In this document: positions 43,380 to 63,995 of the stretch, piece by piece | Layout of the letters: the number at the start of each line of letters is the position of its first letter | Numbering within the stretch: the first letter of the stretch is position 1 | From: Podarcis cretensis | Taxonomy: Eukaryota | Length of the DNA stretch: 64,000 nucleotides | Assembly (NCBI GenBank): GCA_951804945.1 | Contig: OX638157.1 | Coordinates: 40,362,001-40,426,000 of the forward strand | Direction of reading: 5' to 3' | The notes under the pieces: model-generated | The model's input: the letters and a program-made list of their open reading frames with translations, nothing else | What the model was told of the DNA's origin: nothing | Database searches by the model: none | Program-made: the position numbers and the translations under genes

Positions 43380-44240
43380 CTGCAAGGAAGAGAGCGCGGG
43401 ACTCCCGAAGGCGTTTACTTCTGTATTATTATTATTATTATTATTATAGACGCGCCTCTCCCCTGCCCCGCTCTGTTTCTGCAGTGCTTCCCTCCGCCGT
43501 CCTTGTGCTCCAGCAGCTGAGGTAACTGCAAGCTCCGCTCCTCCCTTCACGCACAGTCACAGGTGCAAGGACAAAGTAGGGCCGGCAAAGAAGTTCCCAC
43601 TCACGCAGCCCTGCTGCTGCTCCTCGCCTCTGCCGCGGACGGGGCCGGCGGGGAGGGACGAGGCTCTGCCGACCCCAGGCAGCTCCACGGGCGGGAGGTG
43701 TCTCCGGTGCTTCCCCACCAACAGCCTGGCTTCTACCTGCCCGGGGTAGAGAAGAGGGATGGGCAAAGAACTTCGACCTCAGGCAAGCGGCTGGAAGTTT
43801 CCTGTGCAGCTCCTTCACTCCGCCGACGCCGCGAGGAGCTCCTCCATCGCTTCCTGCCTGCCTTAGCAGTTGCTGCGGCGGCGGCTGCTGCTGCTGCTGC
43901 TGCTGCTCTCTGCCGCCATGACAGCGCTGTGCCGAGCCCCGGGAGTGTTGCCGGGCGAGCGGCAAGTGCGCCTGCGCGGCGGCCAAGAGCGGGCGGGGCA
44001 GGGAGGCGAGAAGGCAGCGGGCTTGGTGGAGGGGGGGGGAGGAGGCGCCCGCGCAGGCTCAGGTGAGCACAGGTGTGTCCAGGTGAGGCGCAGGCGTAGC
44101 CCGAACGAAGGTTCCCGTCTGTTCTCCTCGAGGCAAGGGAAACGCTGCGCCGTTGCTGTGAAGGAGAGCTGTGTTATCTCCTTTCTTTTCTTCTTTTAGT
44201 TTCGGGCAAGCGGCACCTGAAGGGCAAGCGGCAGTTTCAG
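43380..44240. promoter_or_regulatory. LRBA: CpG-island promoter of LRBA with non-coding first exon(s)
   Basis: Dense CpG/GC block in otherwise CpG-poor DNA, directly upstream of the first coding exon. NRF1-like TGCGCCTGCGC 43967-43977; GC box GGGCGGGG 43991-43998. Candidate minus-strand donors: GCAG|GTAGAA (exon end 43737), TGC|GTGAGT (43605), GGG|GTGAGT (43299). Confidence 0.85.
43875..43907. repeat. (GCG)3(GCT)8 triplet repeat in probable LRBA 5'UTR
   Basis: Direct reading. Confidence 0.95.
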
Positions 44241-44546
44241 GAAACTGCAAACCTACCTTTTTAGATAGGTCCAGGAAACCTGAGGGGCAAGGAATTAGTA
44301 GCGTCTTTTTATTTGTTGCGTCTTCACGCACTATGGACATCTGGTGACTTGAGGTGCTAGTCCTGTCGAATTCAGGACTGCTTCCGGGGAAACGTGGTCC
44401 CGTGTAGATTGAGATGGGGAGGCGGCGGGGGGAGCGGATGCCCTTTAGCACTGGTGTGGATAATATACGAAAATGAAACCTCTGCTGAACAGGGTTCAAC
44501 GTTCAACTGGGTTTCTTAATTGTTCTTGGCTGCTTTCTAGTTTGCA

Positions 44547-45344
44547 AAGTATATACACAAAGTATCAAATGTGGTGACAGTAGTAATCATACAACAAAAC
44601 AACACCACCACAAACTGGCTTATAAGTACAATATGAACCAAATTTACTAGAACAATAGCTAGAATAGAGATAGACTTGTAACCATTCAAACAACAAACAT
44701 ACTAAGGTGCCATGTGCAAGACAAAGCCTGAAGATACTGTAAACATGGAGTGGATAAATGTACAACTCTATCTTAACAAGTTACATTTGCAGTAAACATT
44801 ATGCAGACTGGATAAATGAACCGTTCACCACAAGTGGGCAAAAGGAGTATACTTTCTTTATCCTGAGCAAACCGTTTTGTATGATTGGCTTTTCGGACTG
44901 ATGAAGCGTGTAGCGAAACCTGTAATATATCCAGAGTACAGGTCTCCTTTTGCCCACTTGCGTTATTTTCACCAGGGTGGTGGCTTTGATTTGTCTTCCC
45001 ATGATTGATCCATGCATACAGCTTTGTGTTTCCAACTCAGGACCCATTGAAGAACATCTCATCCAGCTCAATCTTTGAAAAACAGCTTTGAAAAACTTTT
45101 CCATATTCTCCAGTGTGCTACCCTTGACATTGTGGTGGCACGGGGTTGCCATTCTGTGATTGGACTTACGCTGCTTGTTGAACAGTTCATTTAACCAGTC
45201 TGTATAATGTATCTCCAGGCTTTGTCTTGCACATGGCACCTTAGTATGTTTGTTGTTTGAATGGTTACAAGTCTATCTCTATTCTATTATTCTAGTGAAT
45301 TTGGTTTTATACTTATAAGCCAGTTTGTGGTGGTGGTGTTTTGT
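44547..45344 (+). mobile_element. Non-autonomous hammerhead-carrying retroelement (retrozyme-like or Penelope pLTR-like) with inverted 5' segment
   Basis: 16-bp direct repeat TGCTTTCTAGTTTGCA at 44531-44546 and 45345-45360; long inverted repeat (44592-44830 vs 45175-45346, with a perfect 71-bp core); central hammerhead; no polyA tail; no recognisable RT or endonuclease ORF. Confidence 0.82.
44895..44947 (+). ncRNA. Type I hammerhead ribozyme, predicted cleavage after GUC at 44944
   Basis: GGA-CUGAUGA(44898-44904)-A-GC[GUGUA]GC-GAAA(44915-44918). Stem III ACCUGUA(44918-24)/UACAGGU(44937-43), 7 bp; C17=44944; stem I GGA(44895-97)/UCC(44945-47), possibly extended by GGC(44887-89)/GCC(44952-54) across a U-rich internal loop. 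Confidence 0.88.
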
Positions 45345-46452
45345 TGCTTTCTAGTTTGCATCAAAATGAAGGCTCGTATATGATCATATCAATCCTGGTT
45401 ATAGTTGTATAAAGTTGCATACCCGTCAAACAATCGTTTTGAAAACTAAAAACACAACACTTTGACTCACTGTTCCTAGTTTTTATAAGACTATACACGT
45501 TCCAATGACACTTGTATGCCAAAGAGCATGTTGCCATCAACACCTGACAGAACCATCAGTGGCCAGAAGGACCTGTTGGGGCAGCTCCTCCCCCACCTTA
45601 CCTGAGGCTACTTAAGACCTGCTTGTCCTAAAGGGAAGGCAAAACCTTTGAAGCCCAAGGTAGGGCCATCAGTTCCTACAGAACATTTTAGCTAATAATA
45701 TTTTGTACCATTTGTATGAATGCTGCATTTTAAATTGTAAAACGCCATGGATACCTTGCATTTGCATTCATTGGTTAATATAATGCAATGAAAATATACA
45801 AAAATAGTTCACGTGGTTGGGTGGTTAGCTCTAAGAGGCCTCAAACTACTTGGAACTATTCAGTAGCACAGTTCCACTATAAAATGAGTATGAGGCAAAT
45901 CGAATATCAGTTTTGTAACTCTGCTTAAAATAAGTAATAAACTGATCAGCATATATTGTTCAGAGTGTACCACTTGTTTTGGACTTGGCTGGGTCCTTTG
46001 TCCTTCCAAAATTGCAAAATATACCCGTAAGTCTTCTACATGTAGAGGTCTGTGAAAGCTGTGTTTGCTGTAATGTGTAAAGAGCACTGCAAGCTTGGTT
46101 TTTTGTTTTGTTTGGTTTTTGTATTATGAGTACAGGGGAATCCCTGCTTACATGGGGGTTCTGTTCTGAGTCACTGCCCAGAAATAAGTTCCAGCACGTT
46201 CCACTCCCATTCCACCTGTGGCCCACCCTGTTCCGCCCCTTTTTTGTGCCCAAACTGGCATGTGTGTCAATGGTTGCCTATCATGTGCAAGTGGGGAGGT
46301 GCCTGTACATAGGTCAGCCAAAGCAACACTTGTCCATCACACATTCTCCTGCTGCTAGAATCAAACTTCCAAAATGCAGGTAGCGTAATTGGTCCTAATC
46401 GCCAGCCACAATCCCTTTATTTTCCTCTCACTGGTTTCTTGGTTGTCTAGAA

Positions 46453-46588
46453 CAGGCTTCCTCAACCTCGGCCCTCCAGGCGTTTTTGGCCTACAACTCC
46501 CATGATCCCTAGCTAGCGGGACCAGTGGTCAGGGATGATGGGAATTGTAGTCTCAAAACATCTGGAGAGCCGAGGTTGAGGAAGCCTG
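46453..46588. mobile_element. hAT MITE, 136 bp, near-palindromic
   Basis: CAGGCTTCCTCAACC TIRs; TSD GTCTAGAA / GTCTAGAC. Confidence 0.92.
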
Positions 46589-46782
46589 GTCTAGACCGAA
46601 TACAGCCAGCATGGTGCTGGACTGCAACTCACATCATCCCTGACCACTAAGCATGTTGGCTGGGACTCATGGAAGTTGGGAGTCCAACAACATCTAGAGG
46701 GCATCACGTTGGCTAGTTCCCATACATGTGCACTTGAAAGAATAAAAAGTTACAGCTATCAGAATCCACAAAATCAGTATGG

Positions 46783-63004: not shown

Positions 63005-63995
63005 CAGGCACTTTTGGAGGAAATTGATTTCCTAGATCCATTTCCATCAGGGTCTAGGCCCATTTTTGGCACAGAAACTGATTGGTCATCCTGTATGATG
63101 ACCTCTCCTGGGAGAGAGACAGGGGAAATGTGTCCCTGTTAATTGTCCGTGACGGGTTTCAATACCATCAGCCATGGTATTCTTCTGGAGCTGCTACTTG
63201 AGTTAGGGATAGGCAGCCCCACTTTGCAGTGGATCAACTCCTACTTGGATGGTTGTTTCCAGAGAGGGATGCTTGGGGAGTGCTCTTTGGCCCTGTGGAA
63301 CCATCAATGTGGAGTTCTTCAGGGTTCACTTTTATCCTCTGTGCTGTTTAACATCTACATGAAACAGCTGAATGGGGTTATCTAGAGTTTTGGAGTATGC
63401 TGTCAGCAATATGCCCACGACACACAGCTCTACTTCTCGTTTACATCTGCAGGTCTGAAGATGTTTCAGAAACTTCAGCTGATGCAGAATTTGGTGGCAA
63501 GGTTGCTCAACAGGGAAAGACCATTTTAGCATATTATACTGGTCCTGAACTGACTGCACCAGTTGCCAATTAGTGTCTGGGCCCAGTTCAAAGTGCTGGT
63601 TAAACAACTTACAACTGCAATACCTCAAGGACAAACCTCTCCCCATATGAACTGGGCCCTGCAGTCATCATTTGAGGCCCTTCTTTGTTTACTTCTTCTA
63701 CAAGGGGTTTGGAAGATGGCAACATGAGAACAGGCCTTTTCTGTGGTGACTCTCAGTTTGTGGAATGCTCTTCCCAGGGCGGCTTTCCTGGCGCCTTCAT
63801 TACATATTTTTAGGCGCCAGGTTTCTCTTCAGTCAGAGAATGTTGTCTGGTTGATCAACTATCTATTTTTTTAAAAAAAACAACCCAAACCAACACTATT
63901 GGTTTGTTTTTGTTTGATTATGTATTTTGTATACTCATTTTGTATTTTACTGTTGTGAACTTTACCGGGGTCTTTGGCCAGCTGAAGGACAGCAT
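63005..63995 (+). mobile_element. L2 LINE fragment(s)
   Basis: FNTISHGILL..GVLQGSLLSSVLFNIYM..YAHDTQLY RT remnants, internal deletion, then L2 3' region. Confidence 0.8.

What the first reader, a model, noticed from the sequence alone, without database searches (positions are those of the whole stretch)
44531..45360. Non-coding ribozyme retroelement: ~390-nt cleavage-to-cleavage monomer plus a second unit (retrozyme / Penelope-pLTR-like)
Seen: 16-bp TSD. The left block 44546-44847 read on the minus strand starts with CTCCTTTTGCCCACTTG (= 44944-44960, the bases at and just after the predicted cut) and ends ...GTGTATATACTTT. The + block starts TATACTTT at 44848 and runs into the hammerhead. Flipping the left block gives one continuous RNA: cut site, unit A (301+89 = ~390 nt, ending at the next cut site), then unit B (44945-45346, stopping before its own ribozyme). 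There is no RT/GIY-YIG ORF and no polyA. Known: metazoan non-LTR retrozymes are tandem units of a few hundred nt with a type I hammerhead and circular RNA intermediates; Penelope pLTRs also carry hammerheads. Inference: a non-autonomous, ribozyme-processed retroelement family; I do not recognise it as a described lizard family but cannot search to confirm.
Basis: partly seen in the sequence, partly recalled or inferred. Interest (0 to 1): 0.92.

Follow-up and report, generated by a model that had tools for sequence, protein, structure and literature searches.

The report
Penelope-type inverted insertion with hammerhead motif
This is an old, roughly 800-bp insertion of a high-copy, protein-less lizard repeat built the way Penelope-like retrotransposons insert (duplicated target, two inverted copies, an extra "tail" at one end, a hammerhead-like ribozyme motif), so it is an ordinary member of a known kind, not a new ribozyme retroelement.

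Summary
The sequence facts hold. A perfect 16-bp target duplication (14-16 bp once a 2-nt overlap is allowed) flanks a 798-bp, 38.5% GC insert with no RT/GIY-YIG ORF. The insert is an inverted arm (44547-44847) joined to a direct block (44848-45344). The direct block carries a hammerhead-like core with the cut predicted at 44944|44945.

Contigs from public runs show the insert belongs to a high-copy family: 283-554 contig pieces per run, against a single contig on each flank. This insertion is itself shared by three related organisms, so no empty site was found.

Every structural feature matches published Penelope-like element (PLE) insertions:
- a long target duplication of variable length;
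- 5' truncation;
- an adjacent inverted 5'-truncated copy;
- a 47-nt tail at one end only;
- a sense-strand hammerhead with the PLE-typical extra base between A9 and G10.1.

Other family copies show inverted junctions at other positions.

The hammerhead is atypical (2-bp helix II, 7-bp helix III), Rfam does not detect it, and its activity is untested.

One unusual point remains. The inner end of the inverted arm falls within 1 nt of the predicted ribozyme cut. This may record run-off on a cleaved RNA (about 0.3).

First readers of this scan noted many Penelope/hammerhead insertions elsewhere in this genome.

The parts
44531..44546 (.). Left copy of the target-site duplication (16 bp)
   Evidence: Exact 16-mer found only here and at 45345. 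Many family contigs lose similarity at 44547-44550 (table 7).
44547..44593 (-). 47-nt 'tail': extra 3' extension carried only by the inverted arm
   Evidence: It extends beyond the point where the direct block ends. Other family contigs also end here, next to unrelated sequence. This matches the PLE tail that lies between two RT start sites (PMC11167929, PMC8557442).
44594..44830 (-). Inverted, 5'-truncated copy of the family's 3' part (carries a 58-nt internal duplication, 44748-44821)
   Evidence: Ungapped blocks are 89-95% complementary to 45176-45346. Past 44827 other copies continue with the reverse complement of 45150-45177.
44831..44847 (-). 17-nt cap: reverse complement of 44944-44960, i.e. 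C17 plus the first 16 nt after the predicted ribozyme cut
   Evidence: 17/17 match (I5). It is not the family-typical continuation (loose ends behind 44827). It is joined at a CTTG microhomology.
44848..45344 (+). Direct, 5'-truncated copy running through the hammerhead motif to the short 3' end
   Evidence: Other copies continue upstream of 44849. Family contigs end at 45346/45347.
44887..44954 (+). Type I hammerhead-like motif; predicted cut between 44944 and 44945
   Evidence: Hand descriptor. Core, extra A at 44905, G10.1-C11.1, 2-bp helix II, 7-bp helix III, helix I 3+3 bp. No Rfam match.
45345..45360 (.). Right copy of the target-site duplication
   Evidence: The first two bases (TG) could also belong to the element (I2).

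Best explanation
This is one old retrotransposition event made by Penelope-like element (PLE) machinery, using RNA of a high-copy family that has no RT/GIY-YIG ORF in this copy. The family is either a non-autonomous PLE derivative or the 3' part of an autonomous PLE; this could not be decided. Inferred mechanism: the GIY-YIG endonuclease nicked both target strands 14-16 bp apart. Each 3'-OH primed reverse transcription near the 3' end of a family RNA, one at the 'short' start site (right end, 45344-45346) and one at the 'long' start site 47 nt further on (left end, the tail). The two cDNAs grew towards each other, both stopped short of full length, and were joined head to head at 44847/44848. 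This gives two inverted copies inside a target duplication. The hammerhead-like motif lies in the sense strand of the direct copy. It is inherited from the PLE lineage, where such motifs sit in the pseudo-LTR. Shown here: the anatomy, the family's copy number and shared termini, and junctions at other positions in other copies. Inferred: priming on both strands, and use of two templates. Untested: ribozyme activity.
For: Perfect 16-bp duplication exactly at the family's termini. Both outer ends are the same end of the unit and the inner ends are truncated. A 47-nt extension sits at one end only, and both termini recur in other copies next to unrelated sequence (table 7). 283-554 contig pieces per run lie on the insert against one contig on each flank, in three organisms. 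At least four other loci join an inverted arm to a direct arm at other positions (44827 to 44987, 45002, 45021 and 45097, tables 5 and 5c). Published PLE hallmarks: 5' truncation, an adjacent inverted 5'-truncated copy, a 30-40 bp tail at one end, variable target duplication, hammerhead in the pLTR (PMC8557442). The purified Anolis PLE protein nicks and extends both strands and starts RT at two internal sites that delimit the tail (PMC11167929). The motif has the PLE-hammerhead signatures of an extra base between A9 and G10.1 and a G10.1-C11.1 pair (PMC4209133). Chance expectation is about 1e-4 per element. Indels that distinguish the arms also occur in other family copies (table 4), which points to two templates.
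Against: No RT/GIY-YIG ORF was linked to this family: none in the window and no PLE protein in the protein searches. The hammerhead differs from published metazoan PLE hammerheads (2-bp rather than 6-8-bp helix II; 7-bp rather than minimal helix III). Rfam does not detect it. The 3' end is GU-rich, not the AC-rich stem-loop reported for the Anolis Poseidon element. The cut lies 400/447 nt from the RT start sites, against about 90 nt in that element. The tail is 47 nt, longer than the usual 30-40. The target is not the ATT site preferred in vitro.
Confidence: 0.75

Rival explanations
1. Non-LTR retrozyme in the strict sense. The family lives as tandem arrays with a hammerhead in every unit. Transcripts self-cleave to unit-length RNAs that circularise. 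This insertion copies a multimeric RNA (unit A of about 390 nt followed by unit B), with one part flipped.
For: No RT/GIY-YIG ORF, 38.5% GC, a type I hammerhead-like motif and a long target duplication, as described for metazoan retrozymes (PMC7229834). Retrozymes are reported in 4 of 5 reptile genomes and are derived from PLE pLTRs. The inverted arm's inner end lies at the predicted cut (I5). There is an 8-nt TATACTTT overlap between the tail end and the start of the direct block.
Against: There is only one hammerhead at the locus. No head-to-tail ('goes back') joints were listed among 283-554 family contig pieces per run. Sequence beyond both family termini is unrelated (consensus agreement 0.52-0.59), not the start of a next unit. 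Other copies read differently upstream of 44849 than the tail does. Similarity of the tail to the 5' region is not significant (329 of 1000 shuffles score as high). Contigs of the possible RNA run cross the cut site uncut (records 10-12). The arms both begin at the 3' end, which flipping one RNA does not explain.
Confidence: 0.12
2. A LINE-mobilised SINE-like repeat with a twin-priming-type inversion. The hammerhead resemblance would be a chance or decayed feature with no link to PLEs.
For: A 14-16 bp duplication and 5' truncation also fit LINE-type target-primed reverse transcription. Rfam finds no hammerhead. The looser descriptor also hits a LINE RT fragment at 63455 by chance.
Against: Twin priming gives an inverted 5' part plus a direct 3' part, not two 3' ends. 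There is no poly(A) or microsatellite tail. The one-sided tail and the recurrent inverted junctions are PLE hallmarks. The stricter descriptor is expected only 1.25e-4 times per element, and the motif is in sense orientation as judged independently from the truncation pattern.
Confidence: 0.06
3. A DNA transposon, MITE or fold-back element with long terminal inverted repeats.
For: About 170-bp inverted arms flanked by a direct duplication.
Against: The inverted repeats are not terminal on the left, where a 47-nt unpaired tail intervenes. A 14-16 bp duplication is atypical. The arms have unequal content. Other copies have the inversion junction at different positions and many are not inverted at all.
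Confidence: 0.02

Closest known systems
Penelope-like elements of the Penelope/Poseidon clade, e.g. Poseidon_Ac (PAc) of Anolis carolinensis (PMC11167929; PMC8557442)
   Same: Variable-length target duplication, 5' truncation, an adjacent inverted 5'-truncated copy, an optional tail at one end between two RT start sites, a sense-strand hammerhead motif, no poly(A), and high copy number in lizards.
   Different: No RT/GIY-YIG ORF in this copy or demonstrably in the family. The hammerhead shape differs (short helix II, long helix III). The cut site is 400/447 nt rather than about 90 nt from the RT start sites. The 3' end is GU-rich rather than an AC-rich stem-loop. The tail is 47 nt.
Metazoan non-LTR retrozymes (PMC7229834; bioRxiv 10.64898/2026.07.22.740005)
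   Same: No RT/GIY-YIG ORF, low GC, units of a few hundred nt with a type I hammerhead, larger target duplications, and derivation from PLE pLTRs. Solo 'monomer' copies are known.
   Different: The defining tandem arrangement with a ribozyme in each unit is absent at this locus and was not seen in the family contigs. There is no circular-RNA evidence. Average reptile retrozyme consensus is 176 bp, against roughly 500 bp or more here.
Minimal PLE hammerheads (min-HHR; PMC4209133)
   Same: Type I topology, full catalytic core, an unpaired base between A9 and G10.1, a G10.1-C11.1 pair, a short helix I with an internal loop, and location in a PLE-type repeat.
   Different: Published metazoan PLE motifs have a 6-8 bp helix II and no or a tiny palindromic helix III and are thought to act as dimers. 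This one has a 2-bp helix II and a 6-7 bp helix III with a 12-14 nt loop, closer to the fungal and protist PLE variants.
L1 twin-priming inversions
   Same: An inversion inside a single target duplication, explained by priming on both nicked strands.
   Different: In twin priming the inverted segment is the more 5' part of one RNA. Here both arms begin at the element's 3' end, and one carries the tail.

Membership tests
Penelope-like element insertion | Target-site duplication of variable, often long, length | tested here: met
   A 16-bp perfect repeat (14-16 bp effective) at the element's edges.
Penelope-like element insertion | 5'-truncated copy with an adjacent inverted 5'-truncated copy | tested here: met
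   Arms 44547-44847 (-) and 44848-45344 (+) both start at the unit's 3' end. Other loci show the same build with other junctions.
Penelope-like element insertion | Optional 30-40 bp tail at only one end (sequence between two RT start sites) | tested here: met
   A 47-nt extension on the left arm only. Both the short and the long termini recur in other copies. It is somewhat longer than the published range.
Penelope-like element insertion | Hammerhead motif in sense orientation in the pLTR region | tested here: inconclusive
   The core and PLE-type extra base are present, but helix II is 2 bp and there is no Rfam match.
Penelope-like element insertion | RT plus GIY-YIG endonuclease ORF in the element or in a partner sharing its 3' end | not testable with these tools
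   No such ORF in the insert or the window. No eukaryotic genome or repeat library could be searched. Protein searches found no PLE protein.
Metazoan non-LTR retrozyme | Head-to-tail tandem units, each with a type I hammerhead | tested here: not met
   One hammerhead and no second CUGANGA in sense orientation. No head-to-tail joints were listed, and sequence beyond the family termini is unrelated. Short contigs could miss rare arrays.
Metazoan non-LTR retrozyme | Unit-length linear and circular RNAs | not testable with these tools
   Only assembled contigs were available, with no raw reads. Contigs of the possible RNA run cross the cut site.
Metazoan non-LTR retrozyme | No coding capacity; low GC | tested here: met
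   GC 38.5%. The only long ORF (146 aa, antisense) is accidental.
Hammerhead ribozyme, type I (Rfam RF00163 and relatives) | Conserved core C3-A9, G12-A14, A15.1-U16.1 and H17, with three helices | tested here: inconclusive
   All core bases are present. Helix I is 3+3 bp, helix III 7 bp and helix II only 2 bp. The hammerhead fold is 2.1 kcal/mol above the minimum-energy fold.
Hammerhead ribozyme, type I (Rfam RF00163 and relatives) | Match to the curated covariance model | tested here: not met
   No hammerhead hit at gathering score or at E<=10.
Hammerhead ribozyme, type I (Rfam RF00163 and relatives) | Self-cleavage after H17 | not testable with these tools
   Needs in vitro transcription. 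The Anolis PLE hammerhead cleaved only with its protein present.

The most novel reading that the evidence does not exclude
The 16-17 nt cap at the inner end of the inverted arm (44831-44847) would be the footprint of a PLE reverse transcriptase. It jumped (CTTG microhomology) onto an RNA whose 5' end had been made by hammerhead self-cleavage, ran off that end at U1.1 (within the 1-nt ambiguity of the junction) and then switched to the other cDNA. That would be genomic evidence that ribozyme-cleaved RNAs exist in vivo and are used as PLE templates, which the in vitro study of the Anolis element could not show. It would also indicate that one insertion complex can carry two different template RNAs.
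Probability: 0.3. Interest if true: 0.6.

Novelty: new member of a known kind. Interest (0 to 1): 0.3.

Why it matters
As it stands, this is a textbook example of PLE insertion architecture in a lizard genome. It is useful for repeat annotation, because such inverted composites are often misread. It is also an atypical hammerhead variant (long helix III, 2-bp helix II) worth adding to descriptors, since Rfam misses it. If the coincidence with the cut site proves recurrent across the family, it would give the first in vivo footprint that hammerhead cleavage takes part in PLE or retrozyme mobilisation. That question is still open: cleavage was dispensable in vitro, and no RNA-seq read ends at the cut were found for the Anolis element (PMC11167929).

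Tried and rejected
- Rfam at three settings gave no hammerhead.
- Minimum-energy folding does not recover the hammerhead.
- A search for PLE-type minimal hammerheads (helix II of 4 bp or more, no helix III) found none in the window.
- BLAST of the insert against the window found no other copy of the family in these 64 kb.
- The 146-aa antisense ORF (44799-45239) was considered as a sign of a coding origin and rejected. It has no Pfam match and no homologue of 0.55-1.75 times its length (longer kin not excluded by that search alone). The family-majority base at 45173 makes a stop in that frame, and 11 of 14 differences are non-synonymous.
- The 66-aa ORF of the conserved arm gave no homologues, so no related loci could be fetched through proteins.
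- A full HMMER scan with the sense ORF that starts next to the hammerhead (tested because the Anolis PLE ORF starts in the hammerhead) gave four weak hits. All are tandem-repeat proteins without RT or GIY-YIG domains, so they were treated as noise.
- Similarity between the tail and the family's 5' region (which would indicate a tandem or circular template) is not significant.
- A suspected internal repeat between 44944-44985 and 45161-45200 is not significant.
- The scan's findings index by sequence was blank.
- No empty orthologous site: the two related organisms examined both carry the insertion.
- The second descriptor hit at 63455 lies in a LINE RT fragment and is taken as chance.

Full report
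**1. What is in the sequence**

The 16-mer TGCTTTCTAGTTTGCA occurs exactly twice in the 64-kb window, at 44531-44546 and 45345-45360. Between the two copies lie 798 bp of 38.5% GC. To the left is a CpG-island-like block (43500-44499: GC 0.56-0.68, CpG o/e 0.70-0.77).

The insert has two arms in opposite orientation.

The left arm (44547-44847), read on the minus strand, has three pieces:
- a 17-nt piece identical to 44944-44960 (I5);
- 237 nt that match the last roughly 170 nt of the right arm (ungapped blocks of 86, 40, 35 and 23 nt at 95, 95, 89 and 91%), plus a 58-nt internal duplication;
- 47 extra nucleotides that the right arm lacks.

The right, direct block (44848-45344) runs through a hammerhead-like motif and ends at ...GTTTTGTT, or at 45346 if the first two bases of the duplication are counted with the element (I2). 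There is no poly(A) and no RT or GIY-YIG ORF.

**2. The hammerhead**

Read by hand, 44887-44954 has these features:
- helix I: GGC/GCC and GGA/UCC around a U-rich internal loop;
- CUGAUGA at 44898-44904, then one extra A at 44905;
- helix II: two base pairs (GC/GC) with a GUGUA loop;
- GAAA at 44915-44918;
- helix III: seven base pairs with a 12-nt loop;
- GUC, with the cut expected between 44944 and 44945.

A loose descriptor is expected 0.15 times per 64 kb on both strands. It also hit an unrelated LINE fragment at 63455. With helix III of 6 bp or more, the expectation falls to 0.01 per 128 kb, or about 1e-4 for an element of this size. The motif is therefore not a chance match.

It is not canonical, however. 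Rfam 15 reports no hammerhead at the gathering score, at E<=1 on 4 kb, or at E<=10 on 201 nt. The hammerhead fold (-12.0 kcal/mol) lies above the minimum-energy fold (-14.1), and the region folds no better than shuffled sequence.

Cervera and de la Peña (PMC4209133) list the signatures of PLE hammerheads. Two are met here: an unpaired base between A9 and G10.1, and a G10.1-C11.1 pair. Two are not: a long helix II and a minimal helix III.

Whether a 2-bp helix II allows useful activity is untested here. From my own knowledge of minimal hammerheads it should allow some.

**3. It is a high-copy family, and this insertion is shared**

Contigs from four public runs were laid on 44281-45610 at 80% likeness or more.
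- Each flank is covered by a single contig.
- The insert is covered by 377, 283 and 554 contig pieces in organisms A, B and E.
- It is covered by 38 pieces in a small run of organism I, which is only guessed to be RNA.
- Flank contigs run 26-36 nt into the element at both ends in A, B and E. Only E passes the tool's 31-nt bridging rule; A and B stop at 26-27 nt, as expected where assembly breaks at a repeat.
- Flank divergence is 0% (A), about 1.4% (B) and about 2.6% (E).

The insertion therefore predates the split of these organisms, and no empty site was seen. Many positions where this copy differs from nearly all other copies are CpG-to-TpG/CpA changes, which fits an aged copy.

**4. Family termini and other junctions (tables 5, 5c, 7)**

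- Many contigs lose similarity at 44547-44550 and at 45346-45347 and continue into unrelated sequence (consensus agreement 0.52-0.59). Both the long (tail) end and the short end are therefore real, recurrent termini. Most copies are dispersed, not head-to-tail. No 'goes back' joint was listed.
- Upstream of 44849, other copies continue with GCTGTGCCTGTGA and then with poorly agreeing sequence. The direct block here is therefore 5'-truncated. Whether the family continues into a longer element is unresolved.
- Past 44827, other copies continue with the reverse complement of 45150-45177, not with the 17-nt cap. The cap is thus a feature of this locus.
- At least four other loci join an inverted arm to a direct arm at other positions (direct arms starting near 44987, 45002, 45021 and 45097). 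The inverted composite is a recurrent property of the family, with variable junctions.

**5. Comparison with what is known**

Craig et al. (PMC8557442) describe PLE insertions as:
- highly 5'-truncated;
- often preceded by an inverted 5'-truncated copy;
- carrying a 30-40 bp tail at only one end;
- having target duplications of variable length;
- carrying hammerheads in the pLTR.

Frangieh et al. (PMC11167929) studied the purified Poseidon element of Anolis carolinensis. They found that:
- the protein nicks and extends both target strands;
- reverse transcription starts at two internal sites;
- the stretch between those sites is the genomic tail;
- the hammerhead needs the protein to cleave and is dispensable for insertion in vitro;
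- no RNA-seq reads ended at the cut.

Every architectural feature of this locus fits that picture. Li et al. (bioRxiv 10.64898/2026.07.22.740005) report PLE-derived non-LTR retrozymes in four of five reptile genomes. First readers of this scan also noted a dozen Penelope/hammerhead insertions on other pieces of this genome (titles only, not checked by me).

**6. Most likely mechanism**

Both strands of the target were nicked 14-16 bp apart. The + strand 3'-OH at 44546 primed cDNA at the long start site of one RNA, giving the left arm with its tail. The minus-strand 3'-OH primed at the short start site of another RNA, giving the direct block. The two cDNAs were then joined at 44847/44848.

The arms differ by small indels that also occur in other family copies (table 4), by the 58-nt duplication and by about 215 nt. 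This favours two different templates. The substitution difference alone (5-11% in the ungapped blocks, mostly 5-9%) could have arisen after insertion.

The priming scheme and the use of two templates are inferences. The anatomy is shown.

**7.

The idea of one RNA (cut site, unit A of about 390 nt, then unit B) rests on two things: the 8-nt TATACTTT overlap and the 17-nt cap.
- Other copies do not have the tail sequence upstream of 44849.
- Similarity between the tail and the family's 5' region is not significant.
- No tandem joints were seen.

I therefore do not accept the monomer, nor the proposed 390-nt and 535-nt RNA species.

What remains is the coincidence that the inverted arm's inner end lies at the predicted cut. 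The cap begins at C17, or at U1.1 if G44847 belongs to the direct block, as the reading of other copies (GTGA before 44849) allows. For one locus the chance is about 0.4-1%. But a dozen such insertions were flagged in this genome, and a 17-nt inverted templated filler copied from 97 nt away is also what end-joining repair or RT snap-back can produce. One further contig in organism E starts its match at 44944 (record 29), which is suggestive but could not be examined. I put the 'run-off on a ribozyme-cleaved RNA' reading at about 0.3.

**8. Things ruled out**

- The 146-aa antisense ORF across the motif is accidental.
- No PLE protein is encoded in the window.
- Protein-based routes to fetch other copies failed.
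- The full-library scan with the sense ORF beside the hammerhead hit only tandem-repeat proteins.
- A DNA-transposon reading fails on the non-terminal inverted repeats and the variable junctions.
- A LINE twin-priming reading fails because both arms carry the 3' end.

**9. Verdict**

This is a new member of a known kind. Two points are modestly interesting: an atypical hammerhead geometry that Rfam misses, and a possible cleavage-site footprint that a genome-wide census could test.

Family-majority bases are quoted only as observations.

Noticed in passing
window 43500-44499: A CpG-island-like block (GC 0.56-0.68, CpG o/e 0.70-0.77) directly abuts the left edge of the insertion. The long GC-rich ORFs in it gave no convincing Pfam match. 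Another first-reader note places a gene start (LRBA) about 1 kb from the hammerhead.
   Followed up: partly
window 46455-46693: Two near-perfect palindromic hairpins give sub-threshold matches on both strands to repeat-derived miRNA families (mir-5408, mir-3524, mir-3160, mir-727; 23-41 bits against gathering scores of 80-104). They look like a MITE or hairpin repeat rather than a curated miRNA.
   Followed up: no
window 63200-63500: A decayed LINE reverse-transcriptase fragment (the region around 63410-63440 reads like an RT YADD-type motif). It contains a chance match to the loose hammerhead descriptor at 63455-63504.
   Followed up: partly
window 44799-45239 (minus strand): A 146-codon open frame runs antisense across the hammerhead and the inversion junction. 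It is unusual for 38% GC DNA but is not conserved: the family-majority base at 45173 gives a stop, there is no Pfam match, and no homologue of 0.55-1.75 times its length was found.
   Followed up: yes
window 44924-44937: Nearly all other family copies read G at 44933 and A at 44937. That removes the seventh pair of helix III and creates a palindromic UCCGGA inside loop 3, reminiscent of the palindromic loop 3 of dimer-acting PLE hammerheads.
   Followed up: no
window 45442-45604: A single-copy stretch to the right of the insertion is held, with 2 differences in 163 nt, by a contig of a small (95 million letters) run of another organism that is guessed to be RNA. If that run is RNA, this flank is transcribed.
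   Followed up: no
window 45541-45610: Depth rises again about 10-fold at the right edge of the laid stretch in all three DNA runs, so another repeat probably starts near 45540.
   Followed up: no
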